This document shows, piece after piece, positions 20,171 to 55,376 of a DNA stretch of 64,000 bases. Origin of the DNA: Anthoceros angustus (Eukaryota > Plantae > Anthocerotophyta); the NCBI GenBank assembly GCA_010909165.1, contig VJWM01000011.1:186001-250000 (forward strand), given 5' to 3'. Both the position numbers and the translations under genes were made by a program. The number at the start of each line of letters is the position of its first letter. The first letter of the stretch is position 1. Below the pieces are notes generated by a model that saw only the letters and a program-made list of their open reading frames with translations, made no database searches and was not told the DNA's origin.

Positions 20171-22453
20171 GTTTTACGTGAGTCCCTTTCATCGCTTCAA
20201 TCATACGTCGATACTTGGGGTTGTCGGACAAGAGTTGTCGAAATGTCACAAGGAATTCTTGATCCAACAGAGATTCTGCAAAGCTGGTGACCTTCTCAAT
20301 GAGAGGGTCTTCTCCTCCAACGCAGTTACTCCTTCTTGCACTGGTAACGTTCCATCTTTCGTCATCACTCCCCTGGACCCATGGTTTCTGGGGGTCCATG
20401 TTTCTTTGCCTGCTGAGTGAGTTTCCGTAATTCGGCATCGAGCATGCCTGCCACCTCTTGGCTGATGTCAGGTGCAAATTCGAAGCCTTGGACCGCCCTC
20501 CCTCGGCCGGGCTCACCGGGCCGCTTTCATCTACTTCCTCTGGCATTCTTCTTTTCTTTCGGTCGGATTCCGCCCATCTCCGCCGAACTTCCAATTTCCG
20601 AGCATCCTTCTTGACGTCGGAGTGTCGTCCCTCCTTCCGTCTTGACCGAGTGGCGACGCGTGCGACCAACTCGTCTTCTCCGGATATACCCGAGTCCACT
20701 TCCTGCACTTTCAACTGTTCGCCTTCTTGCTCCTCTCCCCAACGTTCGCCGTCTTCTACTTCCACTTGTAATACCGAGGGGTGGGCAGAGAGGCTGGTTT
20801 TGGTGGAATCTCTGTCACCACCGGGTTAGCGAATGCACTCCCGGGCGAGAATGGTCTTGGGCCCCGTACATCTTGCATCTCCCGCTATATGTCCCGGCGC
20901 CTTGCAGACTGAGAAGGGGGTGTACCCAATCTGTCGCCTTGGTTCTGGACATGCATTCGCATAATGATCAGGCGCCCCACAGTTGTAGCAATGGCCGGTA
21001 CATTCTGGGGTCGTTGAGAGGATTCTGGTTTCCATTGATTCGCAGTTGCTTGCCTTGGACCATACCTCATCCCACTGGGTGATGCCGGTTGATAGGTGGC
21101 TCTCATGGATTGAGGCGGTCGAGCTCCTGTCATGGCCTGCATCTGATACACCTCCTCTCCTGAATAGTATGGGTCTAGATCGTACTCCACGATTGACCCA
21201 TCGTGTCTTGAGGCGGCATTCGTGATGCGTATGGCTGGTGATGACAATTGCTACAAAAGACTTCTGTAGGGAAGGAGATCGTCGGTCGATTCTTGACTAA
21301 TTTGATCTCGATGTCTGCCAGCCGTTTTATCACATCTTCCAAATTCGGCGTACTGGCGGGACTTCCTTCCATTCGTCTCCCTTTTCCCTTCTCTGCAACC
21401 TTCGTGGCGTTTCTCTTGTCTCTCTCCTTCTTCTTCAGCAAATGTTCCAAGTCTTTCCTCACTCGCTTACGATGGGCTTCTTCCGACTCGCTATCATCCG
21501 TCCCAGGCGTTGAATTCTCTTCAGATGATGATGATTCCGACTGAGTGTCTTCGGACGTCGATTCTTCTGACGAACTTGAAGACTGATGTCTCTTCCCTTT
21601 CTTCCTCTTGCCACTCGTTTTCTTCCGTCTTCTCCTCCCGGGCGGCCTCCCATGCTGCCTCGAATGCCTTCCTCCAAGGTATCATTGCCCTGCGGTGAAT
21701 CTCCATCTTTCGTGGTAGTCCACAGACGAACCAATCCAACGCTTGTTCTTCCGAATACGCTTGTGATTCTCCTCCCGTGTTGTCCACTCTCGGAGGTATC
21801 TTCTCCAGAAAACTGTAAAACCGTTCCACATAATCGAGCAAGGATTCTTTCTTCTTTCGCTTCAGAGTGCGAAGTTTTGTTAGTACATGGGTAGTGTGGC
21901 TCAAACCACGGAAACGAATAAGGAAATCAGCTCGCAACACTGGCCAACTGGTGGGTGGGGTAGAGAACTTCCTGGCATACCATTGTTGGGCAGGTCCTCG
22001 CAATAGTCCTGGAAAAATTCGTACCCGATCTGTCGAGGAATCCTCGATGTTAGCCCTCGAGATGGATTCGAAAAGTTTTACAAAACTTTCGGCATCGATG
22101 TCGTCCTCCTTCTTGGATCCAAATTTGGGATATGGCTGTCTTGTGTGGGGGTGCTGAGAGTTTGCTCCTCCGGTACTGGCTCCTCCCGCCCCGCTCATGG
22201 CTATGGGCAAAGGTGTCAGCACTGTTGAGAACCGAGTCGTCACCTGCCGGAGTAAATGAGAAACTCGGGCAGCTCTTGCTCGTGGATTGTGGACTTGGTT
22301 ATGTCTTCGCTCTGCTCCCACAATTCTCGCTTCCTCTCTCGCAGCGCCTCGTGCACCTTCTGTTTGCGCAACTTCCGCTTGTCGAGCCAAATGATCGAGA
22401 TACTGTCGATTGTAAGTGTCCCAATCCCTTGCTCCTCGTTGATCGGCAATCAA
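20170..22453 (-). pseudogene. Gypsy gag with CCHC zinc knuckles
   Basis: YPKFGSKKEDDIDAESFVKLFE..LRGPAQQWY..LRADFLIRF..KESLLDYVERF (retrotransposon gag); CYNCGAPDHYANAC and a second knuckle near 20900. Confidence 0.9.
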
Positions 22454-24455
22454 CGCCGCCCGTATGGCTGCCTCCCGAGCCCTCTCGGTAACAAATTCAG
22501 CGCTGCTGACTCTCCGGGTGATCTCACAACAAGGCCTCGCTCGAGTCCGAAAAATCTTCTAAGGTGTCGATTGTCGAAGAGGATGTGGGTGCGTTCGGAC
22601 GGGTGGTAGCGGGACCACCCTACTTCCTCTCGAGTCTTTCACACCGCTCGGGTGATACTAACTCCACGGTCGTGATCTCTCGAAGGGTTCGCAAAGGAAT
22701 GAGCACGGCCTCACATCGGTTCCGCCTGCCTTCTTGATGCTCCAAAGTACCACTGGCTCCCGTCCGTGGAGTAGGCGCTGTCGGACCTTCTCTGCAAAAC
22801 AATCAAGACGTCCTCCACTCTAGGCTGATGGCTACGGCTAACCTTTCCGGACGCCTCTATCCGCCGTCGATACTCATCCCTTCCGCTGCCCTTTCTCCAC
22901 GAGTTGAAAGGGGGATGACGACTCGCAATGCCCGTTTACTCCCTTTATCCGCTCATGGCTATGGGCAAAGTGTCTTGTCGAATCAGTCGTCACCGGAGTA
23001 AATGAAACTCGGGCAGCTCTTGCTCGTGGGTTGTGGACTTGGTTGATGTCTTGGCTCGCTCCCACAATTCTTGCTTCTTCTCGCTGCCTCGTGCACCTAC
23101 ATTTGCGCAACTTCGAGCCAAATGATCGAGATATTGTCGATTGTAAGTGTCCCAATCCTTGCTCCTCGTTGATCGGCAATCAACGCCCGCTGTATGGCTG
23201 CCTCCCGAGCCCTCTCGGTAACAAATTCAGCGCTGCTGACTCTCCGGGTGATCTCACAACAAGGCCTCGCTCGAGTCCGAAAAATCTTCTAAGGTGTCGA
23301 TTGTCGAAGAGGATGTGGGTGCGTTCGGACGGGTGGTAGCGGGACCACCCTACTTCCTCTCGAGTCTTTCACACCGCTCGGGTGATACTAACTCCACGGT
23401 CGTGATCTCTCGAAGGGTTCGCAAAGGAATGAGCACGGCCTCACATCGGTTCCGCCTGCCTTCTTGATGCTCCAAAGTACCACTGGCTCCCGTCCGTGGA
23501 GTAGGCGCTGTCGGACCTTCTCTGCAAAACAATCAAGACGTCCTCCACTCTAGGCTGATGGCTACGGCTAACCTTTCCGGACGCCTCTATCCGCCGTCGA
23601 TACTCATCCCTTCCGCTGCCCTTTCTCCACGAGTTGAAAGGGGGATGACGACTCGCAATGCCCGTTTACTCCCTTTATCCGCTCATGGCTATGGGCAAAG
23701 TGTCTTGTCGAATCAGTCGTCACCGGAGTAAAATGAGAAACTCGGGCAGCTCTTGCTCGTGGGTTGTGGACTTGGTTGATGTCTTGGCTCGCTCCCACAA
23801 TTCTTGCTTCTTCTCGCTGCCTCGTGCACCTACATTTGCGCAACTTCGAGCCAAATGATCGAGATACTGTCGATTGTAAGTGTCCCAATCCCTTGCTCCT
23901 CGTTGATCGGATCAACGCCGCCCGTATGGCTGCCTCCCGAGCCCTCTCGGTAACAAATTCAGCGTGTCGCTCGTTGACCCCCCTCCGAAGGTGATCCCTG
24001 TCAAACAAGGCGTTCTCCTCGTCAGACTCCGAGTCCGAAAAATCTTCTAAGGTGTCAGTGTCAGAAGAGGATGTGGGTACGGTTCGGACGGGTGGTAGCG
24101 GCAGGACCACCCCTACTTCCCTCTCAGAGTCTTTCACACCGTTCGTGGGCGATACTAACTCCACGGTCGTGATCTCTCGAAGGGTACGCAAAGGAATGAG
24201 CACGGCCTCCGTTACTGGTTCCGCTCTGTCTTCTTGATGCTCCAAAGAACCACCTGGCTCCCCGTCCCGTGGAGTCGGGCGCCTGTCGGACCCTTCTCCT
24301 GCAAAACAATCAAGACGTCCTCCACTCTAGCTGCGATGGCTACGGCTAACCTTTCCGGGATTGCCTCTATCCGCCGTCGATACTCATCCCTTCTGGCTGC
24401 CCTTTCTCCACGAGTTGAAAGGGGGATGTGAGACTCATGATTTACTCCCTTTATC
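22191..24455. repeat. Triplicated segment of about 750 bp in the Gypsy leader / gag N-terminus
   Basis: ccgctcatggctatgggcaaag occurs at about 22191, 22949 and 23678. Copies 1 and 2 are letter-identical over roughly 500 bp, including deletions relative to copy 3. Confidence 0.88.
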
Positions 24456-24797: not shown

Positions 24798-27700
24798 TGT
24801 AAACGATCTAGTCTCGGAAACCCCTGTTAAAATGTGCCCTGAAGTGAATTTTTGTTTTCTTTGAGAGTGGTGTGAAAATAAGTCGATTGACGAGTTGGGA
24901 TATTCATAGTAAAATGTCCTTGGCCTATGGAGTTCTTTTGTTTTATTGCCTAGGTTAGATAATAAATGGTCCGGAACCTGTTCCTTGGCCCATGGACCTC
25001 GATATCCACTACAAGGTCTATATATGCGGGTAGGGGTGGTTATTTGGGGTTTTGTCACCTAAGTTAGGGTCGACCCACCGGCCAGAATGAATGAGTATGG
25101 GGTTGTGGATCATGGGCACGGTCGAGAAGACAACCGGTGGTAGTGGAGGCCAAACTTAACCCTAAGGAAACCGGTAGGGTGACCAGAGCTGCTCAAACGG
25201 CGGAGCGCAACGGGCCGGAGCGGAAAGTGAGGAGTGGAGCGCAACGGGCCGGAGCGTGAGGTCGCCGAGTCAGATTCGAGAGGCGGACCGCGATCACCGG
25301 AGAGCGAGAGGCGCGATCGCGGGAGGGCCGCCCAACCCTCACCGGTGAAGTCGCAACCCCGGGTGGAAGGAAGGCGGCGCGCCGGCCATGAGGAGGTAGG
25401 AACTCGAAGCCGACCTTGCGTGAAATTCGCGCGAGGTGGCACCTGCGAGGCGCGAGACCGGGGACTATCAGGATGGCAAAGCCACGGTGAGATCGCTTGC
25501 CCAATGGCCAAACATGGACCATTGGAAAGTCCGAGCTGGGGCCCGTGAAGGAGCCGGCCTTCATGGAGAAGCGGTGGAATTACACGACCAGATCGGTGCA
25601 GAGTGCCACCTAAAGACAAGCAACCCGAGGGAATTAGAGCAAAACCTCGGATATCCACTACAAGGTCTATATATGCGGGGGGTAGGGGTGGTTATTTGGG
25701 GTTTGTCGGTCCTAAGTTAGGGTCGACCCGGTAGTAGGGAATGAGTATGGGGTTGTGGGTGGGGCATGGCGTGAAGACAACCGGTGGTAGTGCAAAAACT
25801 TAACCTAAGGAAACCGGTAGGGTGACGAGCGCGTTCAAGCGGGCCTGGGTGAGCTGGGCGGCAGTGAGGAGTGGGCGCAGCGGCTGGGCGTGAGGTCGTC
25901 GAGGCGCATTCGAGGCGGACGCGATCGGAGGCGAGAGGCGCGATCGTGGTGGAGGGCCGCCTCGAACCCTCACCGGTGAAGTCGCAACCCAGTGGAAGGA
26001 AGGCGGCGTGCGGCTTGAGGAGGTAGGAACCACAGGCGGCCTTGCCGGGTGTGGCAGTGGCACCGTCGCGACCGGGGACTCTGCGGAAGGATGGCGCCCA
26101 AAGCCACGGTGAGATCACGCTTGCCCAATGGCCAAACATGGACCATTGGAAAGTCCGAGCTGGGGCCCGTGAAGGAGCCGGCCTTCATGGAGAAGCGGTG
26201 GAATTACACGACCAGATCGGTGCAGAGTGCCACCTAAAGACAAGCAACCCGAGGGAATTAGAGCAAAACCTCGGATATCCACTACAAGGTCTATATATGC
26301 GGGGGGTAGGGGTGGTTATTTGGGGTTTGTCGGTCCTAAGTTAGGGTCGACCCGGTAGTAGGGAATGAGTATGGGGTTGTGGGTGGGGCATGGCGTGAAG
26401 ACAACCGGTGGTAGTGCAAAAACTTAACCCTAAGGAAACCGGTAGGGTGACGAGCGCGTTCAAGCGGGCCTGGGTGAGCTGGGCGGCAGTGAGGAGTGGG
26501 CGCAGCGGCTGGGCGTGAGGTCGTCGAGGCGCATTCGAGGCGGACGCGATCGGAGGCGAGAGGCGCGATCGTGGTGGAGGGCCGCCTCGAACCCTCACCG
26601 GTGAAGTCGCAACCCAGTGGAAGGAAGGCGGCGTGCGGCTTGAGGAGGTAGGAACCACAGGCGGCCTTGCCGGGTGTGGCAGTGGCACCGTCGCGACCGG
26701 GGACTCTGCGGAAGGATGGCGCCCAAAGCCACGGTGAGATCACGCTTGCCCAATGGCCAAACATGGACCATTGGAAAGTCCGTGGGGCACAGTGAAGGAG
26801 CTCGGTGGGGTTCATGGAAGCGGTGGAATTACGATTCGGGGATGGTGCGAGTCGCTCGCCACCTAAAGACAAGCAACAGGCGAGGGAATTAGAGCAAAAC
26901 CTCGGGATTGGGACTGGCATTGGTTAGGGAAGTGTATGGGCAGAAGGAGGAGGCGGAGGTTTGGTGATGGAACCTTCTAAAAGGAGCACAAGAAGGCCGC
27001 CCGTGAAGGCGGGCGTAATCCGGGAACCCAATGGTTGGCTGACGCGAGAATTGGCAACAGCACAGTTAATGGGTCTGGCCAGATGGCTTCTCTGCTTCCT
27101 ACAGCACAAGAAGCAGGATTATTTGTCTGACCACTTGCTGTTGTTCCTCCATGAAGTTGTCAAGGGGGCGAAAATCGACTGGGGACGAATCCTCTTTGAG
27201 AAGTTGAGTGAAGAAAGGTTGAACCTGATTTCTCCTACCCCCCGGCCCTCTCTAATTTCACCATTCCTAGTTCATCTTTATGCGCATGCTAATTGCCGCC
27301 AGGTAGAAATTGTGGCCTCCTTCATATGTGGAAGCCCGCCGTGGAGGTAAAGTGGAAAGGAGGAGCCCAAGGAGGAGGCGGGAGGTTTGGTGATGGAACC
27401 TTCTAAAAGGAGCACAAAGAAGAAGGCAGCCGCCCGTGAAGGCGGGCGAATCCGAACCCAATGGTTGGTCGACGCGAGAATTGGCAAGACAAGCTTAATG
27501 GGTCCGCCAGATGGCTTCTCCGCTTCCTACAAAGACAAGAAGTGGATTATTTGTCCGACCACTCCGTTGTTCCTCCATGAAGTTGTCAAGGGGCGAAAAT
27601 CGATCGGGACGAATCCTCTTGAGAAGTTGAGTGAAGAAAGGTTGAATCGATTTCTCCTACCCCGGCCCTCTAATTTCACCATTCCTAGTTCATCTTTATG

Positions 27701-30700
27701 CGCATGCTAATTGCCCGCCGAGGTAGAAATTGTGGCCTCCTTCATATGTGGAAGCCGTGAGGTAAAGTGGAGGAGCCTAAGGAGGAAATTGAGGAGGAAT
27801 CTGACCGGGAGTCCATGGCGAGTGCCCGAGGAAGAGAAGGAAATTTCTACCAAAGAAGAAGAGGAAGACCGGGAGTGTGGGTCCCAGAAAAGTGAAGGTG
27901 GACGCCACTGTCGGCAGTGCCGCCACAGTGAAAAAGCAAAGAAAATGAAAGCCAAACGGCATCGAGGTGGCGGAGGAAGAGGCGCGGTCCGAGGAAGAAA
28001 ATTTTGCCGACTGGATGCGGATGATGAGCCACCAGAGGAATTACGACCTCGTGAGCGGACCCCTCCTCAAAGATGGGAAGAGATTTTCAAGGGACTCCAC
28101 CGGCAACAGAGGTGGACGCATTAATTGGTGAGGGTGCGCACTTTGTTGGGAAGGAAGGTGCTCGACGGAGGATGGCGTCCGCACGGGCCGCCGCAATGTG
28201 GAATTGCTGTGAGCCGACGACATCGGCGATCCGGGCCCAAGCGGATTTGTTGGACCAAGCGGCCTTGGCTCTCACATGGCTCGGTGCAAGGCGGGAGGAA
28301 GTGGTGAAGGCGGGTTTGTGAAGGAGAAGCCAAGCAAGCAATCGGAGGAAGACAAGCGGCCTTAGAGGAGATAAGGATCAAGCTTCAGGAGGATTTGTGC
28401 AGGCCTGTGAGAAGCCGCAGCCATGACGAGTCACAGGAAGCGCCATGGCTCAAATCAAGGATGCCCACGAGTCAAACCAGAGATGCAGGAGAGCTACAGC
28501 CCTGGAGCAGGAGGCGGCCTCGTGGAGAAGGTCCATAAGTCGCGGAACGTATAAACGGAACGGATGAGGCACGTGGCCGAACCAAAAGAGAAGGGAAGCG
28601 AGGTGGGCCCGGCCGGGTGGTGAGGTGCGCACTTTGGGAAGGAAGGTGCTCGGCAGAGGATGGCGTCGGCAGGCGCCGCAGCAGGTGGAATTCTGAGGCG
28701 GCGACATCGATGATCCGGGCCCAGCGGTTGTTGGACCAAGCGGCCTTGGCTCTCACATGGCTCGGTGTGCAAGGCGGGGAGGAAGTGGTGAAGGCGGGTT
28801 TGTGAAGGAGAAGCCAGTATAGCTGGAGGAAGACAAGCGGCCTTAGAGGAGATAAGGATCAAGCTTGAGGAGGATTTGTGCGGGGCCGGGAGCTGCAGGC
28901 CATGGCAGTCGGCGAGGAAGCTCATGGCTCAAATCAAGGATGCCTGAGTCAAACCAGAGATGCGGGGAGGCTATTGCGAGCCCGGGGAGGCGAGGCGGCC
29001 TCGGTGGAGAAGGTCCATAAGGGAGCAGTATAAGCAGGAGCAGGATGAGGCACGTGGCCGAACGAGAAAAGAAGGGAGCGGTGGCGGGACTACGGCCGGG
29101 GTAGTGGAAGGCACTACCGAGGGAAGGACACAAAGGTAGTCAAACACCTACCACTACCGGACCAACGACGGTCGTGGAGACCACTGCCGTGGTAGCGGAA
29201 GCGGCAATGGACGGGGCGACAGGACGCGACGCGGCACCCCGCGAGGACATGGACCAGGCAACCAGGTGTAGTCTACGGGAGGGGGGGTAAGCACCTCTGC
29301 TACAGCAGGAGGTCGTATTATGTTGCGGCACATGGATGAGGAAACTTACGTGCCTGGTCTATATGTGAATGGGGAACGCGTGCTTAACTTCACTGTCCAT
29401 GTGCGTGTGGAAATAGGAGGGATCAGTCCTACCCATCGCAAGTGAGGACCAAGTGCATACTTCTACCATTGCGCCAGAGTGTGGGGATTGGCCCCTATTA
29501 TGCGGAGGCGACCTTGGAGGAGTTGAGTGAAGAGGAGGTCCGAGCTTGGGTGGATGAGGCGGTGGTAATCCTCGGCAATAGGCGGCCGGAAGAGGCGGAA
29601 GTTCCGGGGCGGTATGCCTCAATTAGGGCGTCCAGTGGCGGTGAGGTGGAAGTCACAGTGGGAAAACCCGTCGGATCGGTGGCGTGGCGGGAGGGCTCGT
29701 GGCGGCGGCGATGGAGGCGAAGGCGGCGGACGAGTCGGGGAGGCGCGGATAAGCGTAGGCAATAAGTGGTAGCATCCTAGGAAGGAAAATTTGAAGGATG
29801 CACTGGACCTAGATCGCTTAGAATTGTGGGTGCGTCCCTTGGTTTTAGGATCTAGAAACTGGGAAACGGGCGGCCGATGTATAAGAGGGGCAACTTTTGC
29901 CCACCACAGATAACTCCGGTTGAGATCCCCACCGTGGATGGTTGGAGACGTCCGATTAGCGGAGGTGGTGTGTGCGAGGCAGCTCACAGGAGTGGTCGAG
30001 AGCTTGCTCCATAGCGGGAGGAAGTGGTGAAGGCCAGTTTGAAGGAGAAGCCAGAAGCAATCGGAGGAAGACAAGCGGCCTTAGAGGAGATAAGGATCAA
30101 GCTTCAGGAGGATTTGTGCAGGCCTGAGAAGCCGCAGCCATGACGAGTCACAGGAAGCGCCATGGCTCAAATCAAGGATGCCCACGAGTCAAACCAGAGA
30201 TGCAGGAGAGCTATTGCGAGCCCAGAGCGTGAGGCGGCCTCGGTGGAGAAGGTCCATAAGTCGTGAACGGTATAAACGGAACGGATGAGGCACGTGGCCG
30301 AACGAGAAAAGAAGAGGCGAGGTGGCGGGACTACGGCCGGGGTAGTGGAAGGCACCGGAGGGAAGGACACAGCCAAGGTAGTCAAACACCTACCACACCA
30401 AAACGACGGTCGTGGAGACCACCGTGGTAGTAAGCGAATGGACGGGCGACAGACGCGACGCGCACCGCGAGGACATGGACCAGCAACGGTGTAGTCTACG
30501 GAGGAGGGGGTAAGCACCTCACCAGGAGGTCCTATTATGTTGCGGCACATGGATGAGGAAACTTACGTGCTCGGTCTATATGTGAATGGGGAACGCGGCT
30601 TAACTTCACCGCCCATGTGCGTGTGGAAATAGGAGGGATCAGTCCTACCCATCGCAAGTGAGGACCAAGTGCATACTTCTACCATTGCGCCAGAGTGTGG

Positions 30701-44030: not shown

Positions 44031-46287
44031 GAACGGCAGGGTAGAGACATTGCATCATGAACCTAATAGTCATTAGAAGCTTAGAGCAGTTGGCCACATC
44101 CACAGCTTCGGAGAAGCTTCCCTAGAGTAAAGGAAAGAAGCCATCAGAAGCTGCGAGTAAGCCCTTGATTCAAGTCTTGTTCATCACCCTTACTACTGGC
44201 ACCAGCCTCACCGAACAAGGCTGCTTGCTCTGTCATCCAGTTGAGGCCCTGACAGAGAAGTACAACGACTTCGTGCTCTGCCCAACCTTACGGAGGGAAA
44301 AACTCTTTCTGATAGTGAAGAACACTGTCGACTAAGGAAAAAGATAAGGACCTCCAGCACATTCGGAATGGGGATGGAATTGGTCCAAACTGTAGCCAGC
44401 TCGGACAGTGGACTGTCCAGAAACATCTCAGGGACAGTGGTGAGTCTAGAAGCACCTACCACAAATCCGGTGCGCCCACTTTTCGACATAATTCACACCG
44501 GATCTAAGGAACAGGCCGTTCCAAGGATCTTTGACACGTTATCCTGATTATTGTGAACAGACTTTCAGCGGTTTTGATTCTACGGTCTGGACTTTCACCT
44601 GAGCACCGTGTGTGCCATAACAGTGGAAGGGCTGCGAGTGTGAAGGCGTGCGAGAAATACTGCCTCCTTCGCTGGTGGCCAACAGTGAAATAGATTCACT
44701 TAATTGTAAGAGTTTTCTTGCAGAGATCTTCAGCTAAAAACTCAGTTTGCAGAGTGATCAGCAAGGTGAGGTTGCGTTTCAGCTCTACTATATGGTAAGC
44801 AATTCGTAGCCTACTCAGGGTTGATCAAGTTGCCAGGAGATGATCGATCGGTGATCCTGACGGGAAATGTTAGCCTCTGCCAGAACCTTATCTCCAGGGC
44901 AAATTTGCATTTGCAGCAGCGTGGCGATGTCGGAATCTAGTCAGCTTCTCGGAGTAGCACAATTGTCTTACTAGCAGCAGACTGCGTTGTTGAGCAGAGT
45001 CCCCGCGGCTTGACATCTCGCGCGGTTGCTAATCACTCGCATTGCTGCTTCTCGAGATCAAGCAAACTGACTGGTAAGCAGATCCTAGCAGCCTGGTTTG
45101 ATGCCGATGATGGCTGCTTGAGCTCCTTGAGGCCTTGGTGGGCCAAGTGATTCCGTAATGCTGAGCCACACTAAAGCTTGGATCAAAGAGCCTCAGGTGC
45201 AGGCCGGGCGACGGGCGTCGTCGAATATGGATACGTATAACACATGTTCCACGAGACCTGTGGCTGGCCAGCAGTGCAGTCCTCCGGCTCCCACCATGTA
45301 CGTATAACACGTATGCCACGAGACCTGTGGACTCCATCAGGGCCCGATCTGCTATGAGGCTCCAACCTCGTGAATGGTTCGGTTTGGAGCATGGAAAAGG
45401 CCGCCACAGGCTGAGCCTCAAGTTCACAGGCTGTTGGTGCTGCTGTTGGTGTTGGTATTGGAGCTGGTGCTGGTGCCGGTTCTGGTTGACCCTCAACCCG
45501 GCGAGGCAGAGGAAAATCAGGGATGGATCGGGGCGTGGTATGCGCAGCAGGGTGCAGGTGGCGGGTAACGAGGAATTTGGCAGCGTTTTGGAGGGAATTC
45601 CAGTTCCAAAACAGAAAAGGCATGGCAAAGTAGGATTCCACTCCATGGTATGGCATTACACGGGCTGCAGCAGCTACCTTATAAGGCGGCACCTGCCACT
45701 GCCTCTCTGTCCCCTTTGCAGTGCCTTGCTCTGGCTGGCACCATTATTTGTTGGCTGCTTCTGTTTGCCTACATCACTTCCCCAAAACTGGTATCTCTCG
45801 TCTACTCCCTCGTTTTTTTCTGCTTATCAGCTTGGAACTTGCTCTGCCGAACTCCACATTCTGCACCCACTTCAGAGTCACTCTCCTCTCAGCATACTCC
45901 TGTCTCCTGTCAGCTGGAATCTGGCACCGTTATCACCCAACCCGCTCCTGTCCTTCATGTTGACCTCACATCTTAAATCCCAGCGCAATCCTTGCTCACT
46001 TGTGGTAACCTATTAACGGATCTGATAAAGGAGGCAAAGCAAGCTCTTGGACTCTTGAGCAACCTCTTCCAGTTTTTTTAAGGTACACTCCCCACATTAT
46101 ATTGCATCTATCTAACGTGCAGACTGGCATCAGTACTCTTGAAACATGTATGTCCCAAGATGAGCAGGTGAATACTTTGTCCCATCGTTCATTTTTGGAG
46201 GCTTCTCATACACTCTCCTGACAGATCAATTCTCGCATGCTGCAACAAGAACCCCAACAGCACTAGTGCCAAGTTTCAGCCGTGGAC

Positions 46288-47698
46288 ATGGCAGCAGCTG
46301 CAAACAAGTCAAGCCGGCCCTGCATCTTGGGGATGGGTACTGCCAATCCTTCAAAGGTCATATGGATGAAAGACTTTGCAAAAAGTTATGGCCAGGCAAT
46401 CGGTGTGTCCGCAGATGTCCAACTAATTGCAGACCGGATTTGTAAGCCCCTCAACAGAATGACTGCTGGTTGCACACACTTAGTCCAGACTGGGTTCTAC
46501 TAGACTACTAGTTAGATGCTTATCTTGCTGCATCAACTATTGTCCTCCAGGTCAATCAACAGGCATCACCCGAAAGCACTTGGCTGTTACGTACGACCAG
46601 TACGCCCAGAATAACAATCTGAAAACGTTCGGAGCCCCATCACTGGATGACCGATTTGCCTTGTTTGAGTCTGAGGCCATACCACTTGCCCAGGAGGCTG
46701 CGGACAAGGCAATCCAGGAATGGGGTGTGGACCGTTCTGCCATCACTCATGTCATCACATTCTCCACAAACGGGATGCCTTCTCCTGGAATAGACATGCA
46801 GCTCATCAAGGCTCTCAAGCTGGACAGGACCACAAAGCATTTCACGGTTTCATTTATGGGATGCCACGCAGGCCTGATCGGCATTCGGACGGCCGCAGAG
46901 ATTGCTTTGGCTGATCCATCTCACCGTGTTCTGGTGGTGTGCGTGGAGCTCAACTCGTGTCAGGTAGTATTAGATCTCTCAAGCAAAGCATGCCTACATC
47001 TACCAGACATCTGACAAGATAATCCATGGAACGTGTCTTTTGTTCCCAGGCACAACCCATAGATCCAAATGACATCGCCAACAACCTGGTTGTGGCTTCC
47101 ATATTCGGAGACGGGGCAGCGGCAGTAGTGATCGGCGCCAAGCCAACTGAAGCAGAGAAGCCCATCTACGAGCTCCACCGCTCCAACACAAGCTTCATCC
47201 CACAGTCAGACACTGCCATCATAGCTCGCCTGACCCAGTCTGGGCTCAATGCAGCGCTCTCCAAAAGGGTTCCACAGTACGTAGGCGAGAATGTTGCAGG
47301 CTTCGTTCACGAGATCCTGGAGGGCACTGGCTTGAACTTCGATACCATCAACTGGGCGCTACACCCTGGAGGCAAGGCCATCGCAGATACCGTGGAGAAG
47401 AACTGCAAACTTAGGCCAGAACAACTGCAGGTTACCAGGTACGCTGAACCACCCCAGGGCCACACCCGTTGCATGCACGCCACCATGGTCTATCCCCAAA
47501 CCCACGCTCATGCTTGGTACCACGTGCTCCTGCAGGAGTATTTACAACATCTACGCCAACATGGGAGGACCCACTGTCATTTTTGTGCTGGACAAGTACC
47601 GTAAGCAGAAAGAGGAGGTGCCAACCTGTGAGTGGACCCTGGCCTTGGCTTTTGGGCCTGGAATCTCTGTTGAAGGGACGCTCATGAGGATGGTCTGA
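46288..47698 (+). CDS. Type III polyketide synthase (CHS superfamily, non-CHS), 4 exons: 46288-46441, 46551-46963, 47050-47438, 47536-47698
   Basis: ILGMGTANP; FMGCHAG (catalytic Cys); FGDGAAA; [10 protein letters not shown] (His); YANMGG (Asn); [11 protein letters not shown]. All three introns are GT-AG and splice in frame. Confidence 0.95.
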
Positions 47699-49445
47699 GC
47701 CTGTAGGTGAAAGTTGGACCAGAAGATGTACTCACAAAAAACAGGTCTGGGATCCATCACCTCGGCGATTTCAAGCCCACTAATCCGGCAGCACATTCGA
47801 GCTCCGGGCTCCATGAGCTCGTTCACACCATCCTAGGCAATGGCATATGTACATCATTTTGACCGTTTAAGATTGGGATGCGTGTAGCCATTTATAAGCC
47901 TGCAGTCATTGCACACAAATACTTTAATTAATTAAAGTGGGTGCATTACGCCAATGCATATTCCACAAACGAGCATTTACGTGGACAATTTCCCATGGTG
48001 ATAAAGATCTAATAGCCTTGTCTTTCCTCACTCGGCTCCGCGATAGAGGCATATGGTAATCAGCATTCCTGTTACCCTATGGGAGACCGCACCCATGCTA
48101 TTGCTCCAGGCTTTCCGTGACATGGAAGTAGGCTGAGGGAGGGAGGGGCACAGCTGCAGAGGCTAAAAGCCCAAAGCAACTTTGCCAGCTCCTGAGGCTA
48201 AAATCTACCAGCAAATAAACCAGCCCGCTGGGTCAATGGGAGACACCAAGTCCACTGGCCACGCTCAAAAACCCGGGACGTCCGGTGCTGCTCGGGCACA
48301 TCAGGGGCAAGCACCGGACGGGCATATCAGGGGCATCACCAGCTTGGGTGCCGACAGAAAGGGACGTCGATGCGTCAGGACCGGCTGCAATGCCATGTAC
48401 TGCAGACTGATTAGCCAACTCTGAAATCTTTGCAGAAGCTTTCTTCCTAGGATGCTTTCTAGACAGGTGATTGTTGGGTTGCTTCTCAGCAGATGCACTG
48501 CTGGGTTGTTTCCCAATATTTGCACTATAGGAAGCATCCCATCATTTCCATTGCTGGGTTGCTTCCTTGCAGATGCCCTTGTTGGTTGCTTCCCAGCAGC
48601 TGGTAATTGCTTCGCGGCAGATCAACTGGCGGGTTGCTTCGAACCGGCAGATGCTTTCCTAGGCTGGTTCGGTTCACATGCACCCGCAACGCCATCGTGT
48701 GTATCCTGGCCAGCGGATGCACCCCAACCTTGTGCGCCTACGGGAGGGTCCCGAGCCTCATGGCAGCGTACGCTCCAGCAACAATGGCAGTATGCTGAGG
48801 CTGCAACTCAAAAAGACGGTCCAGCGCTGCACTTCCAACCACCTCCATCTCATCCTCCTGACCCTCCTGGTTGGGATGAACGGAGTTGCTTCCCCCGTTC
48901 AAGTCCTTCATTTGAGTCCCTTCGTCAGTTTGTCTTCAAGATACCGCAAGCTCCGTAGAACACAGCACCAGGAGGAGCCAACCGACAATAGCTGGCAAGA
49001 GGCCCCTGCACACAGAAGCAAAGCCCAAGGCTCGTTCCGGACCGTGTGCGAGGCCCATCTAACACCATCTAGCCGGGATGGCTTGTTCACAGCGCAGCGT
49101 CCTCACCACCGGAAGAAATGCACACAGCTTCCTTCCAGTCTTTGGAGCCGGAATCAGGCCCCGCCCCCAAAGGCACGTCATGAAACTCGGGCGCTCCCAG
49201 CTCAATCCGGCAACCGCAGCCCCTCTTCCACCGGACCTGAGCCAAATTCCAGGGCTGCACTCCTCGCAAGTGAGCTCGCCCCAGTCCGTGACCCAGCCAG
49301 GTCGCAAGCCCCAAGACGGCAAGCCAACGCTCTCCATGTCTCTCTCAGTTTGGAGAGGGATGGAGTTATGAAGCACATCCACGGCAAGAGACAAAGCAAT
49401 ACTCTCTGGCGTAAACACTCAGGTACTGGCTAGCTCTCATGATTC

Positions 49446-52400
49446 TCAAGGTCGACCCTTACAACTGCAACAACCAGCTGTGAATCGATGCACACGGTAC
49501 CCATCCCTGACAACAATGTCTCTCTGTTCAAGCCTTGACATTATCTCCGTGGAACTGTGGCAGTCACTGCACATGCGTAGATTCTTCGTTACCACCAGAG
49601 GTGTCCCACTCGGAGTGTTCAAGAGACCAAACGCCAGAGCTAGCTTCTCAGCATGCCCACAAAGCGCATCTTCCTTTTCCTTCTCAGACAGTGGCTTCAA
49701 CACCAACTTTGTATGAGGTACGTGGCCTCCCTCCTGCTTCACACGTGCATTGGTGCTCTCTACCTTGAGCGCAATATCCTTTGTCCGTGCTCCCACCAGA
49801 AATCTGTGTACCTGCTTATTCACCTCAATGCTCGCTACTGCAGGTTTCTTGTTAGCTCCTGCTGCCCTTCTCTGTGTTTCAATCCTGTCTACATCGGTCC
49901 ACCTACCTGCATCTGCGTAGGCATTGGCCATGAGCACATACGCAGACGCCCTTTGAGGGTCCAGCCTAACAATGCTTTCAAAACACCACGCAGCCCTCTC
50001 TATATCCCCGTGACTTTTGCAGGCATTCAACAAAGTCAAGCCCACAACACTACTTTGGCCCTCACATGATAATAACATCTTCTCTGCCTCATCTAAATGG
50101 CCTGCACGCCCAAGAAGATCAATCATGCAATGTAATGCTCAATAGTAGGTTTGATGCCATGCTGTTCAGCCATGGAATCAAAGTGCTTGCGACCCTCGTG
50201 GACCAGTCCCTCATGACTGCATGCTACTAGAAGGCAAGTAAAAGTAGCATCATTAGGCTGAACACCGGCAACTAACATCTCCTCAAAACAAGCTAGTGCC
50301 TTGTGACCTTCATCACAAGCACCATACCCAGATATCAGGGCATTCCATGTCACCACATCCTTTGTGGCCATGCTGTCAAAAACCTGGCGTGCATCTTCCA
50401 GTTCACCACATTTTGCATACATGTCCACCAGGCAGTTGCCCACAACGTCATCCAGCAGTCCTCTTTCACAATCTGAGTGCAGCTGCCTGCCCTTCTGTAA
50501 GGCACCAGTGCTTGCACAGGCCTTCAGAAGGCAAGCAAAAGTAACATGGTCAGCCAAAATGAGCCCTCCTCCATTTGTCCATACACAACAAGCGCCTCTT
50601 GGCCAGTCCTTGCTGTGCATACCCAGCAATCAGGGCATTCCATGTCACCACATCCTTTGTGGCCATGCTGTCAAAAACCTGGCGTGCATCTTCCAGTTCA
50701 CCACATTTTGCATACATGTCCACCAGGCAGTTGCCCACCACTACGTCATCCAGCAGTCCTCTTTCAATCTGTGAGTGCAGCTGCCTGCCCTTCTGTAAGG
50801 CACCAGTGCTTGCACAGGCCTTCAGAAGGCAAGCAAAAGTAACATGGTCAGCCAAAATGAGGCCTCCTCCATTTGTCCATACACAACAAGCGCCTCTTGG
50901 AGTCCTTGCTGTGCATACCCAGCAATCAGGGCATTCCATGTCACCACATCCTTTGTGGCCTGTCAAAAACCTGGCGTGCATCTTCCAGTTCACCACATTT
51001 TGCATACATGTCCACCAGGCAGGTGCCCACCACTACGTTATCCAGCAGTCCTCTTTTACAATCTGTGAGTGCAGTGCTGCCTGTAAGGCACCAGTGCTTC
51101 ACAGGCCTTCAGAAGGCAAGCAAAAGTAACATGGTCAGCCAAAATGAGGCCCTCCTCCATTTGTCCATACACAACAAGCGCCTCTTGGCCGAGTCCTTGC
51201 TGTGCATACCCAGCAATCAGGGCATTCCATGTCACCACATCCTTTGTGGCCATGCTGTCAAAAACCTGGCGTGCATCTTCCAGTTCACCACATTTTGCAT
51301 ACATGTCCACCAGGCAGTTGCCCACCACTATGTCATCCAGCAGTCCTCTTTCAATCTGTGAGTGCAGCCTGCCCTTCTGTAAGGCACCAGTGCTTGCACA
51401 GGCCTTCAGAAGGCAAGCAAAAGTAACATGGTCAGCCAAAATAAGGCCTGCTCCATTTGTCCATACACAACAAGCGCCTCTTGCCCTTGCTGTGCATACC
51501 CAGCAATCAGGGCATTCCATGTCACCACATCCTTTGGCTCTGTCAAAAACCTGGCGTGCATCTTCCAGTTCACCACATTTTGCATACATGTCCACCAGGC
51601 AGTTGCCCACCACTACGTCATCCAGCAGTCCTCTTTGACAATCTGTGAGTGCAGCTGCCTGCCCTTCTGTAAGGCACCAGTACTTCCACAGGCCTTCAGA
51701 AGGCAAGCAAAAGTGACATGGTTAGCCAATATCAGGTCCTCCTGCTCCATTTGTCCATACAGGAGAAGGGCCTCTTGGCCCAGTCCTTGCTGTGCATACC
51801 CAGCAATCAGGGCATTCCATGTCACCACATCTTTAGCGGCTAAGCATTCAAAAACCTGGCGTGCATTTTCAAGTTCACCACATTTTGCGTACATGTCCAC
51901 AAGGCAGTTTCCCAGCACTACATTATCAAGCAGTCCTCTTTCAACAATCAGAGAGTGCAGCCACCTGCCTTTCTGCGAGGCACCAGTGCTTGCACAGGCC
52001 TTCAGAAGGCAAGCAAAAGTAACATGGTCTGCCAAAATAGGCCCTCCTCCATTTGTCACAACAAGCGCCTCTTGGCCGAGTCCTTGCTGTGCATACCCAG
52101 CAATCAGGGCATTCCATGTCACCACATCCTTTGTGGCCATGCTGTCAAAAACCTGGCGTGCATCTTCCAGTTCACCACATTTTGCATACATGTCCACCAG
52201 GCAGTTGCCCACCACTATGTCATCCAGCAGTCCTCTTTCGACAATCTGTGAGTGCAGCTGCCTGCCCTTCTGTAAGGCACCAGTGCTTGCACAGGCCTTC
52301 AGAAGGCAAGCAAAAGTAACATGGTAGCCAAAATGAGGCCCTCCTGCTCCATTTGTCCATACACAACAAGCGCCTCTTGGCCGAGTCCTTGCTGTGCATA

Positions 52401-53823
52401 CCCAGCAATCAGGGCATTCCATGTCACCACATCCTTTGTGGCCATGCTGTCAAAAACCTGGCGTGCATCTTTCAGTTGCCACATTTTGCATACATGTCCA
52501 CCAGGCAGTGCCAACAAACAAGTTAGTAGGAATGCCACTCTGCACCACATCACAGTGCACTTTTCTGCCAGATTCCAAGTCGGCAGCAAATGCACAAGCT
52601 TGAAGGGCAGCTACAAAGACGTGAGCATCTGCCTTCACTCCTGACCTACGCATCTCATGGTACAGTTGTATGGCCTCATAGGTTTCCCATGTTTAGCATG
52701 CAGATTATGGAAGACCACATGAAGCATCTGGTTTGCCCACCCTGGTGAACACATCCATGGCCTCCTCTACCCTGCCTCCACATGCATACATGCGCAAGAT
52801 ATGGTTCCCCACATATGCAACCGACTCGTACCCGAGTTTGACACTGAGATCATGAAGTCGTCGCCCCACAACCAAATCCTTCTTAGAGGTACACAGTTTT
52901 AGCACAGTGCACAAGAGAGGCTGAGAAATAGCAGAGTCTGTCTGCGCCAGAGATTCCAGGGCTCCAACAGCCTCAGAAAGCCTCCCCTGCTGACATAACA
53001 TGCTCACGGTTCCAGCCGTTACGACGGCCATTTCCGATCCTGCGCGCCTGCCAGGTTCAGGCTCATCCGGAGAGCTAGGCTCTGAAGAAGAGGCACCAAG
53101 GCCCATCTGCAAATCGAGGGAAATTAGCTGCTCATCAACCCAAGCTGGCTTAAACATGTTGTTTAACCACAGCACCTCGCCGGACCCCTTACGCCGGAAG
53201 TCAGGCAAACGGGAGCTCTTCTTATCTCGTCTGTTGTCCCACCACATGGCAGGGTCCAGAAACAATTGTTGCCACAAGTCCTCCTGCTCCTGGCGAGGAC
53301 CATCGTTGGAAATCCCGTCCACACCCACACATTTTCTCGGATGTGGAAGTGCTGGGCTCCTTACACTGCTGCACCCGGAACCCATTTCCGATTCTGCACG
53401 CCTCCCAGGTTCAGGAGAGGCACCGTGACCCATCTGCATATCCACGGAAAAGAGCTTCTCATCAACCCAAGCTGGCTTCGACGTGTTCAACCACAGAACC
53501 TCGCCTGACCCCTTACGCCGAAAGTCAGGCGAACGGGAGCTCTTCTTGTCTCGTCTGTTATCCCACCACATGGTAGGGTCCAGAAAAAATTGTTGCCACA
53601 AGTGCTCCTGCTCCTGGCAACGACCATCGCTGGAAAACCTGTCCCTGCCCACACACGTTCTCGGAAGTGGAAGTGCAGAGCTCCTTACACTGCTGTACCT
53701 GGGGGCCTTGTTTGCCAGGGGTCGACTCCCTGAGATGAGGTGAGCGGGAGCTCCTGGTAGAATCCCTGTACAGACACCAATTTGTTCGGTCCACCACGCG
53801 TCCGGTTGCCATGCTGTGGCCAT
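49446..53823 (-). CDS. PLS-class PPR protein with two N-terminal OSB-type PDF motifs and C-terminal E1-E2-DYW:KP (GRP); frameshifts in the repeat array may be assembly errors
   Basis: ORF 52705-53871 carries two [43 protein letters not shown] motifs followed by PPR motifs. About 8 P-L-S triplets lie at 50340-52600. The terminal ORF reads [42 protein letters not shown]. First ATG in frame is 53823; an out-of-frame ATG slightly upstream (MRKLVYGSSSSW..) could be the true start. Confidence 0.9.
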
Positions 53824-55376
53824 CGTTCCGGGACCGCTGTCGAAAGATGAGTCTACCCAAAGACTACCCACACTAGGATGGATGCCCAGGATGAAGATGA
53901 ACCGTACACCAACTTCCTCATGTCGAATAATTATTTTATAAAAAAGAAAGAAATTATAGGGAATAAATCGGGTACGGTACCCCTATGGCCAACATCGACA
54001 TCATGCAATGCATCGACAGCAAGCTGCGCTCTCCCCTAGGCCTTCGTCTCTCTAGGCCCCCTCCGACTCCTCTGGCGGTCCTTCAATCTCGGCAGCATGA
54101 TGTACTGCTCCTACTGCCTTCAAGAGCTCCGCGTTATATTACGCGAAGTCTGAGTCGATCTATTGGATGGCCTCCTCCACATGGGCTCGGAGCACTCGAT
54201 ACTCCCGTCGCCAGAGATTCTCGGTAGCTGGGCGTGCCTAGTCGCTTGCTGCGCCATTCCCATCGCGAGGTCGTCCAACCTGGTCCTGGCCGCATCTCGT
54301 GAAGCCATTAAGGTGGCTTCTGCCACCTTCTAGAGTCGTTGCTTTTCATTGGCGCGCTCCTCCTCCTCGCTTTTGCGACTCGCGCCCGCCATGGACCGAG
54401 TTCTCCTCCGCCTTCCACAGCGGATCGCCAGCTCGCTTCTCCCTCAACGTCCTTTCCTGCTTTGTCATCTTCTTCTTGTCTCGTCTGTTGTCCCACCACA
54501 TGGTAGGGTCCAGAAAAATTGTTGCCACAAGTGCTCCTGCTCCTGGCAACGACCATCGCTGGAAAACCTGTCCCTGCCCACACACGTTCTCGGAAGTGGA
54601 AGTGCAGAGCTCCTTACACTGCTGTACCTGGGGCCTTGTTTGCCAGGGGTCGACTCCCTGAGATGAGGTGAGCGGGAGCTCCTGGTAGAATCCTGTACAG
54701 ACACCAATTTGTTCGGTCCACCACGCGTCCGGTTGCCATGCTGTGGCCATCGTTCCGGGACCGCTGTCGAAAGATGAGTCTACCCAAAGACTACCCACAC
54801 TAGGATGGATGCCCAGGATGAAGATGAACCGTACACCAACTTCCTCATGTCGAATAATTATTTTATAAAAAAGAAAGAAATTATAGGGAATAAATCGGGT
54901 ACGGTACCCCTATGGCCAACATCGACATCATGCAATGCATCGACAGCAAGCTGCGCTCTCCCTAGGCCTTCGTCTCTCTAGGCCCCTCCGACTCCTCTGG
55001 CGGTCCTTCAATCTCGGCAGCATGATGTACTGCTCCTCGCTTCAAGAGCTCCGCGTTATATTACGCGAAGTCTGAGTCGATCTATTGGATGGCCTCCACA
55101 TGGGCTCGGAGCACTCGATACTCCGCGAGATTCTCAGAGTGGGCGTGTTAGTCGCTTCGCGCCATTCCCATCGCGAGGTCGTCAACTGGTCCCGGCCGCA
55201 TCTCGTGAAGCCATTAAGGTGGCTTCGCCACCTTCTAGAGTCGTTGCTTTTCATTGGCGCTCCTCCTCCTCACGCTTTTGACCGCTGCCTACCATGGACC
55301 GAGTTCTCCTCCTTCCACAGCGGATCGGCAGCTTCGCCTCCCTCAACGTCCTTTCCTGCTTTGTCATCTTCTTCTT
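53541..55376. repeat. Tandem duplication of about 930 bp covering the PPR 5' end and upstream region
   Basis: Copies at 53541-54470 and 54471-55376, with TCTTCTT at both ends and at the junction. Confidence 0.88.

What the first reader, a model, noticed from the sequence alone, without database searches (positions are those of the whole stretch)
52705..53823. OSB-type PDF ssDNA-binding motifs fused to a PLS-PPR / DYW:KP U-to-C editing protein
Seen: one unbroken ORF carries two copies of W-QQ-F-LDP-x-WWDNR-x-DK-x4[20 protein letters not shown] (about 53450-53610 and 53130-53290) and runs with no frameshift or intron into PPR motifs ([52 protein letters not shown]). The gene then continues through the PLS array to E1-E2-DYW:KP. 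Established: WWDNR..PDF..LWL is the C-terminal PDF motif of plant organellar single-stranded DNA-binding proteins (OSB1-4/PTAC9), which act in nucleoids and recombination surveillance; PLS-DYW proteins edit RNA. Inference: a PDF-PPR-GRP architecture I do not know to be described. It could tether reverse editing to nucleoids or R-loops (co-transcriptional editing), use PDF as an extra single-stranded nucleic-acid clamp, or even act on ssDNA.
Basis: partly seen in the sequence, partly recalled or inferred. Interest (0 to 1): 0.9.

Follow-up and report, generated by a model that had tools for sequence, protein, structure and literature searches.

The report
PDF-motif PPR editing-factor gene, broken copy
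The window holds a frameshift-riddled copy of a plant organelle RNA-editing gene whose front end carries two genuine OSB-type "PDF" single-strand-binding motifs. The same PDF-plus-PPR design occurs intact and expressed in fern, moss-like and hornwort-like sequences, and no paper I could search describes it.

Summary
The minus-strand ORF 53823..52705 encodes two 108-residue tandem units. Each holds a PDF motif, and both match annotated OSB proteins strongly (OSB3 of Chenopodium, BLASTP 6e-30). They run without a break into the first PPR motifs.

The claim that the gene "continues" to E1-E2-DYW:KP holds only in layout. Between 52722 and 50130 the reading frame is broken by about 20 frameshifting deletions and an in-frame stop. 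As assembled, this is a pseudogene or a badly assembled repeat, not an intact gene. The KP-type DYW tail (ends GRP) is intact and closest to hornwort transcripts.

The architecture is not a one-off:
- PDF-PPR genes are single-exon ORFs in Ceratopteris and Adiantum, and single-ORF transcripts in Pteridium.
- At least 9 paralogues occur in moss-like metagenome contigs. Several are intact PDF-PLS-E-DYW genes of the C-to-U type. For one paralogue (E-type, no DYW domain found) a spliced transcript restores the PDF in frame with the PPR array.
- A hornwort-like contig (L087) shows PDF, PLS and a KP-like DYW with an unbroken 675-codon body.
- PPR-linked PDFs cluster together in a tree.

No paper in the searchable library links PDF and PPR. 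Function is inferred: an auxiliary single-strand nucleic-acid binder placed 5' of the PPR footprint.

The parts
52705..53823 (-). Head ORF (372 aa from the first ATG; the open frame extends up to 53982): presumed targeting peptide, two PDF units, linker and first PPR-like motifs. It ends at TAA 52705-52707.
53440..53622 (-). PDF motif 1 ([61 protein letters not shown])
   Evidence: AlphaFold2 model with pLDDT 87.9.
53113..53298 (-). PDF motif 2, 82% identical to motif 1
   Evidence: dN/dS between the two units is 0.35, and 0.22 in the motif core.
53089..53699 (-). 324-bp intragenic tandem duplication (1.9 copies, 86% matches, 1% indels) that produced the two PDF units
52723..52998 (-). First, degenerate PPR-like motifs, still in frame with the PDFs ([10 protein letters not shown] ... 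[21 protein letters not shown] ... KPDA)
   Evidence: Pfam PPR below threshold, 18.5 bits. Collinear with P0145 at 39% identity over 200 aa and with L087 at 38% over 86 aa.
52676..52722 (-). One PPR motif read in three successive frames (PDA / FMWSSII / HAKHGKP / YEAIQLY). This implies three 1-nt deletions and creates the stop at 52705.
52453..52692 (-). Non-repeated PPR motifs ([42 protein letters not shown]...), back in the head frame until about 52508
50323..52509 (-). PLS array: 7.4 tandem copies of a 297-bp (99-codon) unit, 90% matches and 5% indels. About 13 frameshifting deletions of 1-5 nt, plus in-frame deletions of 3-6 nt.
   Evidence: Pfam PPR 2.8e-35 on the longest open piece.
49446..50138 (-). 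Intact tail (230 codons plus TGA at 49446-49448): last PPR, E motif (49824-50012) and DYW:KP domain (49455-49727). Contains [27 protein letters not shown] and the C-terminus GRP.
   Evidence: Best relatives are Nothoceros aenigmaticus transcripts at 60-64% identity.
54514..54962 (-). 100% identical upstream copy of 53585-54035 (927-bp tandem duplication of the promoter, 5' end and first half of PDF 1). It yields a truncated third PDF half ([15 protein letters not shown], 54472-54531) that then diverges.

Best explanation
The locus is a disrupted copy, either a decayed pseudogene or a badly assembled repeat. It belongs to a hornwort-type lineage of a widespread but undescribed subfamily of PLS-class PPR RNA-editing factors. 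In this subfamily one to three OSB-type PDF motifs sit between the targeting peptide and the PPR array. Shown: the PDF motifs are homologous to those of OSB proteins. They have evolved under purifying selection since their internal duplication. The PDF-to-PPR junction is conserved in related genes from hornwort-like, fern and moss-like sources. Intact relatives are transcribed as one ORF, and in one moss-like gene splicing restores the PDF motif in frame with the PPR array. Inferred mechanism for intact members: the PPR array reads the RNA 5' of the editing site and the DYW domain (KP type here) does the chemistry. The PDF module lies only 10-45 residues before the first PPR, on the 5' side of the PPR footprint. 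There it adds sequence-independent binding to single-stranded nucleic acid. It could clamp the upstream RNA or anchor the factor to single-stranded DNA at transcribing nucleoids. This particular copy cannot make the full protein from the assembled sequence.
For: PDF homology: 611 HMMER hits. Top named hits are OSB3 of Chenopodium and Lupinus and OSB2 of Ananas, with SSB Pfam domains in the same proteins. Constraint: dN/dS is 0.35 between the two PDF units (core 0.22, dS 0.31) and 0.26 between PLS units 1 and 2. Fusion elsewhere: Adiantum KAI5076972 and KAI5061374, A. nelumboides P0162, and Ceratopteris KAH7429238. The Ceratopteris and Adiantum genes are single exons of 2376 and 2406 nt. Pteridium transcripts P0082 and P0159 and the 4755-nt contig L001 carry one 1371-aa ORF each. 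Hornwort-like Logan contigs L002-L004 and L087 also carry the fusion. In L087 a PDF ORF is followed by an intact 675-codon PLS-E-DYW:KP-like ORF, joinable by an 88-nt GT..AG intron. Of 80 metagenome loci with a PDF match, 70 have PPR motifs directly downstream on the same strand. Intact 855-970-aa exons end in DYW. L011 is a spliced transcript of L052, L053 and L060, and one of its exon junctions lies inside the PDF. PPR-linked PDFs cluster: 14 of 16 fall in one clade of 18 (SH-aLRT 84), needing 5 changes against a minimum of 12 in shuffles. Breakage of this copy. Published work, as reviews report it: the PDF motif of OSB1 suffices for ssDNA binding (PMC6963530), and OSB1/2 prefer ssDNA to RNA (PMC4166229).
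Against: No binding, localisation or editing data exist for any PDF-PPR protein, so the role of the PDF module is pure inference. OSB1/2 prefer ssDNA to RNA, which argues against a simple RNA clamp. The species behind the Logan and metagenome contigs are not identified ('hornwort-like' and 'moss-like' are my readings of the sequences). The L087 intron is predicted, not observed. The PDF tree rests on 63 columns and has weak support. I could not read Zaegel et al. 2006 (not held) or any subscription literature, so the fusion may already have been noted somewhere.
Confidence: 0.75

Rival explanations
1. True pseudogene. After a first frameshift the PLS units were amplified by unequal crossing-over and picked up slippage deletions. 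Head and tail still look open only because decay is recent.
For: About 20 frameshifting deletions. Many are 2-6 nt long and not in homopolymers, which is unlike typical consensus errors. The same 1-nt gap recurs at the same place in four units, as expected if it was copied with the unit. Seven near-identical PLS triplets would read a periodic RNA, which is implausible for a site-specific factor (inference). GRP-type genes are under-represented in transcriptomes (PMC9478123).
Against: There are no breaks in 1965 nt of head and tail against about 20 in 2595 nt. That split has a probability of about 1e-5 if breaks were spread evenly (my arithmetic). Indels are about as frequent as substitutions among the units (TRF: 5% each), which is unusual for natural decay.
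Confidence: 0.55
2. Intact, functional PDF-PLS-DYW:KP gene. On this reading the frameshifts are assembly or polishing errors confined to sequence that is repeated within the gene and across many paralogues.
For: Breaks are confined to the repetitive PPR part. All are deletions relative to the unit consensus. The indel-to-substitution ratio is about 1. Other repeats in the window also show 5-11% indels. Three suspicious 100%-identical 0.6-0.9-kb tandem duplications lie in the same 64 kb. Head and tail are open and under constraint. An apparently intact counterpart exists in L087.
Against: Multi-nucleotide deletions at non-homopolymer sites are not typical of polished assemblies. The neighbouring chalcone-synthase-like gene reads cleanly apart from what look like short introns. 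No reads are available to test this.
Confidence: 0.35
3. Chimera or artefact. The PDF segment would belong to another gene, a captured fragment or a mis-join, and would not be part of the PPR gene.
For: A 927-bp perfect duplication of the 5' end lies immediately upstream, so the region is structurally unstable or locally mis-assembled.
Against: PDF and PPR share one open frame. The PDF-linker-PPR junction is collinear with P0145 (39% identity over 200 aa) and with fern proteins (alignment A1). The same order is seen in 70 of 80 independent loci. The PDFs group with other PPR-linked PDFs rather than with OSB PDFs.
Confidence: 0.03

Closest known systems
[quoted passage not shown]
   Same: The same roughly 50-60-residue PDF motif, with the same conserved W, P, WWDNR, K, PDF-K, LW and P-WV positions. 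It occurs in one to several tandem copies.
   Different: OSBs place the PDF motifs C-terminal to an SSB-like OB fold. Here there is no OB fold (no Pfam SSB hit) and the PDFs are N-terminal to a PPR array. PPR-linked PDFs form their own group in the tree.
PLS-class PPR-DYW:KP proteins of hornworts (GRP and DRH subgroups), candidate U-to-C editors
   Same: PLS triplets, an E motif and a DYW-like deaminase with the KP pair, HAE, CxDCH and a C-terminal GRP. The tail is 60-64% identical to Nothoceros transcripts (PMC9478123, PMC11845758).
   Different: No N-terminal PDF module is mentioned in the papers I could search. This copy's array is frameshifted and made of near-identical units.
Unannotated fern PDF-PPR proteins (Adiantum KAI5076972.1 and KAI5061374.1, Ceratopteris KAH7429238.1, Pteridium transcripts)
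   Same: One to three N-terminal PDF motifs, a short linker, then a PLS array. The junction is conserved.
   Different: They end after E motifs with no DYW domain detected. They are deposited as hypothetical or generic PPR proteins.
Moss-like PDF-PLS-E-DYW genes in JGI metagenome contigs (e.g. L033, L069, L027)
   Same: The PDF lies immediately before the first PPR. The genes are intact, and splicing is shown for one E-type paralogue (L011).
   Different: Canonical DYW (C-to-U type: PG-like box, HSE, C-terminal DYW). There is a single PDF, split by a phase-0 intron, and the linker is only about 10 residues.
Accessory-domain fusions in editing factors (RRM-PPR, MORF-PPR, ORRM1)
   Same: An extra nucleic-acid- or protein-binding module fused to editing-factor domains (PMC13386178).
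   Different: That kingdom-wide survey lists no OSB or PDF fusion (0 occurrences of either word). PDF has no Pfam model, so domain-based surveys cannot see it.

Membership tests
PDF motif (as defined in OSB proteins) | A roughly 50-residue motif with conserved Pro-Asp-Phe and flanking W/WWDNR/LW/P-WV positions, significantly similar to the PDFs of OSB proteins | tested here: met
   BLASTP 6e-30 to RefSeq OSB3 of Chenopodium, with each window PDF aligning to each of its PDFs. 611 HMMER hits. Invariant D, R, K, F and nearly invariant W, P, W, P, D, K, L, W, P, W in 133 aligned motifs.
PDF motif (as defined in OSB proteins) | Binds single-stranded DNA | not testable with these tools
   Known only for OSB1/2 (PMC6963530, PMC4166229). 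The AlphaFold2 model is confident (pLDDT 87.9) but has no solved structural relative.
OSB protein family | Central SSB-like OB-fold domain followed by C-terminal PDF motif(s) | tested here: not met
   No SSB hit in the window ORF at E<=1, whereas OSB hits P0003 and P0032 show PF00436. Here the PDFs precede a PPR array.
PLS-class PPR protein | Tandem P-L-S pentatricopeptide motifs | tested here: met
   Pfam PPR 2.8e-35 and PPR_2 5.7e-32 on 51616-52422. 7.4 units of 99 codons.
PLS-class PPR protein | One uninterrupted coding frame from the N-terminus to the C-terminal domain | tested here: not met
   About 20 frameshifting deletions and a stop at 52705.
DYW:KP (U-to-C type) domain, GRP subgroup | KP instead of PG at the domain start; Ala/Cys instead of Ser after the His of HxE; CxxC(H) zinc motif; conserved active-site Lys; a non-DYW C-terminal triplet (GRP or DRH in hornworts) | tested here: met
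   [27 protein letters not shown] and C-terminal GRP. Pfam DYW_deaminase 1.8e-33. Criteria taken from PMC11845758 and PMC9478123.
DYW:KP (U-to-C type) domain, GRP subgroup | U-to-C editing activity | not testable with these tools
   The activity of natural KP proteins is still unknown according to PMC11845758.
PDF-PPR subfamily (proposed here) | PDF motif(s) directly N-terminal to the first PPR, in one ORF or transcript, with homologues in other species | tested here: met
   Window ORF; P0145 collinear; ferns, hornwort-like and moss-like loci.

The most novel reading that the evidence does not exclude
Non-seed land plants (mosses, hornworts, ferns) share an ancient, overlooked class of organellar RNA-editing factors. 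In this class an OSB-type PDF single-strand-binding module is built into the N-terminus of the PPR array, and it includes working U-to-C (DYW:KP) editors in hornworts. The PDF module couples editing to single-stranded DNA or nascent RNA at nucleoids, or otherwise sets target access. On this reading the frameshifts in this locus are assembly errors.
Probability: 0.3. Interest if true: 0.75.

Novelty: new variant of a known kind. Interest (0 to 1): 0.6.

Why it matters
How PLS-PPR editing factors find and hold their targets is still argued over, as is whether editing is coupled to transcription at nucleoids. In seed plants the helper functions are supplied in trans (MORF, ORRM, OZ). A built-in, OSB-type single-strand-binding module in the 'all-in-one' editing factors of mosses, hornworts and ferns would be a new accessory domain for this machinery. 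It is directly testable with the existing E. coli and Physcomitrium editing assays, whose published PPR56 constructs omit the N-terminus ahead of the PPR array (PMC10482289). It also bears on designer C-to-U and U-to-C editors. PDF has no Pfam model, so domain surveys miss it, and a profile built from alignment A2 would let others annotate it. The particular copy in this window matters less, because it is broken as assembled.

Tried and rejected
- **Domain libraries:** Pfam and NCBIfam scans of the head ORF found no model for the PDF part.
- **Structure:** a PDB sequence search and Foldseek of the AlphaFold2 PDF model against PDB found no relatives, so the fold gave no functional lead.
- **Exact look-up:** the window ORF, with either start codon, is not on record in public assemblies. 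I therefore have no transcript or second assembly for this locus.
- **Word-based homologue searches:** these were insensitive (8 and 7 hits). The exhaustive HMMER search and the metagenome scan were what revealed the family.
- **Failed scan:** The search for related loci with the broad alignment A1 failed for lack of a conserved stretch. The narrower A3 worked.
- **Introns as the cause of the frame changes:** rejected. The changes coincide with deletions relative to the repeat consensus, not insertions.
- **Capture by a transposon or mis-join:** rejected because the junction is conserved.
- **Chance or low-complexity match:** rejected on E-values.
- **Species behind the contigs:** I could not identify the species behind SRR33208241/2, SRR4210093 or the JGI contigs.
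- **Literature gap:** I could not read Zaegel et al. 2006.
- **Rfam:** nothing in the window.
- **Logan contigs L002-L004:** they show internal collapses in their PLS arrays, so I did not use them as evidence on intactness.

Full report
**1. What is in the sequence**

On the minus strand an ORF runs from 53871 (GTG; first ATG at 53823) to a TAA at 52705-52707. It holds two 324-bp tandem units (TRF 53089-53699, 86% matches, 1% indels). Each unit encodes [42 protein letters not shown], at 53440-53622 and 53113-53298. After a 45-residue linker the same frame continues into [10 protein letters not shown]... and [21 protein letters not shown], which are weak PPR matches (Pfam 18.5 bits).

**2. The rest of the gene**

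Downstream lie a PLS array and an intact tail.
- The PLS array (50323-52509) has 7.4 copies of a 297-bp unit, with 90% matches and 5% indels.
- The tail (49449-50138, 230 codons) has Pfam E_motif 1.1e-13 and DYW_deaminase 1.8e-33.
- The tail carries the published marks of DYW:KP: the KP pair ([10 protein letters not shown]), Ala after the zinc-binding His (HAEKLA), [11 protein letters not shown], and a C-terminal GRP (criteria in PMC11845758 and PMC9478123).
- Its best relatives are transcripts of the hornwort Nothoceros aenigmaticus (60-64% identity, ending GDRH or GERP), ahead of a fern transcript at 49%. The window is therefore most likely hornwort DNA.

The three parts are not one reading frame.
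- The PPR frame is lost at about 52722. One motif is read in three successive frames (PDA / FMWSSII / HAKHGKP / YEAIQLY), which implies three 1-nt deletions. The first of them creates the stop at 52705.
- Aligning the seven repeat units as DNA shows about 13 deletions that shift the frame, plus several in-frame ones.
- Frame tracing adds about four more breaks in the flanking motifs, including the last one between IEHY and MIDLLGRAG.
- My count is about 20 breaks in 2.6 kb, against none in the 1275-nt head and none in the 690-nt tail.

As assembled, the locus cannot encode the full protein.

**3. Pseudogene or assembly error?**

I could not settle this.
- **For real decay:** many deletions are 2-6 nt long and not in homopolymers. 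One 1-nt gap recurs at the same place in four units. An array of near-identical PLS triplets is an unlikely site-specific reader. GRP-type genes are reported as rare in transcriptomes.
- **For error:** the breaks are confined to the part that is repeated within the gene and among paralogues. That split has a probability of about 1e-5 if breaks were spread evenly. All breaks are deletions. Indels are as common as substitutions. Other repeats in the window show 5-11% indels. Three 100%-identical 0.6-0.9-kb tandem duplications lie in the same 64 kb.
- **Constraint:** both ends look constrained. dN/dS is 0.35 between the PDF units (0.22 in the core) and 0.26 between PLS units 1 and 2.

I put a true pseudogene at about 0.55 and an intact gene at about 0.35.

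**4. Are the motifs PDF motifs?**

Yes.
- An exhaustive HMMER search with the PDF pair found 611 proteins at E<=1e-3.
- Named top hits are OSB3 of Chenopodium quinoa and Lupinus and OSB2 of Ananas. These proteins also carry the SSB-like Pfam domain.
- BLASTP to the Chenopodium OSB3 gives 6e-30, with each window motif aligning to each of its PDFs.
- In 133 aligned motifs the D, R, K and F of WWDNR..K..PDF are invariant.
- Pfam and NCBIfam have no model for this motif. That explains why it is invisible to domain surveys.
- AlphaFold2 gives a confident small helix, three short strands, helix fold (pLDDT 87.9). It has no relative among solved structures.

**5. Is the fusion a one-off?**

No. This is the main result.

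Ferns:
- Among the HMMER hits, proteins with N-terminal PDFs followed by PLS arrays come from Adiantum capillus-veneris (KAI5076972, KAI5061374), A. nelumboides and Ceratopteris richardii (KAH7429238).
- They also come from Pteridium aquilinum transcripts and from a 4755-nt contig carrying one 1371-aa ORF with three PDFs.
- The Ceratopteris and Adiantum genes span exactly 792 and 802 codons, so they are single exons and not gene-model fusions.

Hornwort-like contigs (two neighbouring public runs):
- P0145 is collinear with the window from PDF through the linker into the first PPRs (39% identity over 200 aa).
- L087 has a PDF ORF whose motif is the nearest neighbour of the window's. It is followed at once by an unbroken 675-codon frame encoding linker, PLS, E and a KP-like DYW domain, 45% identical to the window's tail.
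- The two L087 frames can be joined by an 88-nt GT..AG intron. That join is a prediction.

Moss-like contigs:
- A scan of JGI metagenome contigs with PPR-linked PDF patterns returned 80 plant loci. In 70 of them PPR motifs start within 900 nt downstream on the same strand. The figure is 46 of the 47 loci with enough sequence, and 29 of those 47 also have a DYW domain.
- These loci represent at least 9 paralogues. They include intact 855-, 864- and 970-residue exons ending in canonical DYW.
- In these moss-like genes the PDF is split by a phase-0 intron.
- Contig L011 matches genomic loci L052, L053 and L060 at 100% identity in five blocks, so it is a spliced transcript. One of its exon junctions lies inside the PDF and restores it in frame with the PPR array.

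Tree: in a tree of 133 PDF motifs, 14 of the 16 PPR-linked ones, including both from the window, fall in one clade of 18 (SH-aLRT 84). The PPR-linked label needs 5 changes on the tree, against a minimum of 12 in 1000 shuffles. This fits one old origin, although 63 columns resolve little.

**6. How it probably works**

Established knowledge:
- PLS arrays bind RNA 5' of the edited base, one motif per nucleotide, with the DYW domain acting 4 nt beyond the last motif (PMC10482289).
- The PDF motif of OSB1 suffices for ssDNA binding (PMC6963530).
- OSB1/2 prefer ssDNA to dsDNA or RNA (PMC4166229).

In all PDF-PPR proteins the PDF lies 10-45 residues before the first PPR, on the 5' side of the PPR footprint. 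My inference is that it adds sequence-independent affinity for single-stranded nucleic acid. It could hold the RNA upstream of the target, or tie the factor to single-stranded DNA at transcribing nucleoids. The ssDNA preference of OSBs favours the second reading. The separate clade of PPR-linked PDFs leaves room for a changed preference. Nothing here tests either. The module accompanies C-to-U-type (moss-like), E/E+-type (fern, hornwort-like) and KP-type (window, L087) ends, so it is not specific to reverse editing.

**7. Comparison with what is known**

- The locus is not an OSB, because it has no OB fold and the PDFs are N-terminal.
- By sequence it belongs to PLS-PPR and DYW:KP/GRP, but it fails the test of an open frame.
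- The searchable literature does not link PDF with PPR. Four searches found nothing.
- A 2026 kingdom-wide survey of editing-factor domain fusions never mentions OSB or PDF.
- A 2026 study of OSB evolution never mentions PPR.
- The original OSB paper and subscription journals were not available to me, so prior notice cannot be excluded.

**8. Verdict**

This copy is broken, but it points to a widespread, apparently undescribed variant of PPR editing factors. I rate the novelty as a new variant of a known kind and the interest as 0.6.

Noticed in passing
window 53585-54035 and 54514-54962 (period 927 bp; weaker third copy of the upstream part at 55017-55312): A perfect (100%) tandem duplication of the gene's 5' end and upstream region. 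It creates a truncated third PDF half at 54472-54531. It is either very recent or an assembly artefact.
   Followed up: partly
window 25494-26093 = 26118-26718; 22427-22726 = 23157-23456: Two more 99-100% identical local tandem duplications (periods 624-625 and 730 bp) in the same 64 kb. Together with the 927-bp one they raise doubts about local assembly quality.
   Followed up: no
window about 46270-47700 (+): A chalcone/stilbene-synthase-like (type III polyketide synthase) gene (Pfam Chal_sti_synt_C 1.3e-19). Its frame changes look like two short introns rather than frameshifts.
   Followed up: partly
window about 15240-22450 (-): A fragmented Ty3/gypsy-type retrotransposon: gag at 21524-22453 and integrase at 15243-15719.
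   Followed up: partly
window 50364-52327 (+): Long ORFs (up to 299 aa) antisense to the PLS array. They are by-products of the repeat, not genes.
   Followed up: no
proteins P0005, P0165-P0169 (Effrenium voratum CAJ1451737, CAJ1390561 and others): Dinoflagellate proteins with 6-8 PDF motifs each, although reviews state that PDF is confined to green plants (PMC4166229). This could be transfer, contamination or a wider distribution.
   Followed up: no
protein P0041 (Coptis chinensis KAF9616283, 1526 aa): PDF motifs (3 stretches, around residues 190-246) N-terminal to a kinesin motor domain. This is either another PDF fusion or a gene-model merger.
   Followed up: no
L033 9849-9990; L052 9857-10007: In moss-like PDF-PPR genes a phase-0 intron splits the PDF motif after WWDxRxEK. 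The fern and window copies have no intron there.
   Followed up: yes
L002, L003, L004 (Logan SRR33208242): PDF-PPR contigs with internal gaps and frame jumps inside their PLS arrays. Most likely short-read assembly collapsed near-identical PLS units, which suggests such repeats are typical of this lineage.
   Followed up: partly
window 11835-12162, 26944-27756, 28126-29077: Other tandem repeats with unusually high indel content (7-11%). Region 24-32 kb has a strong positive GC skew.
   Followed up: no
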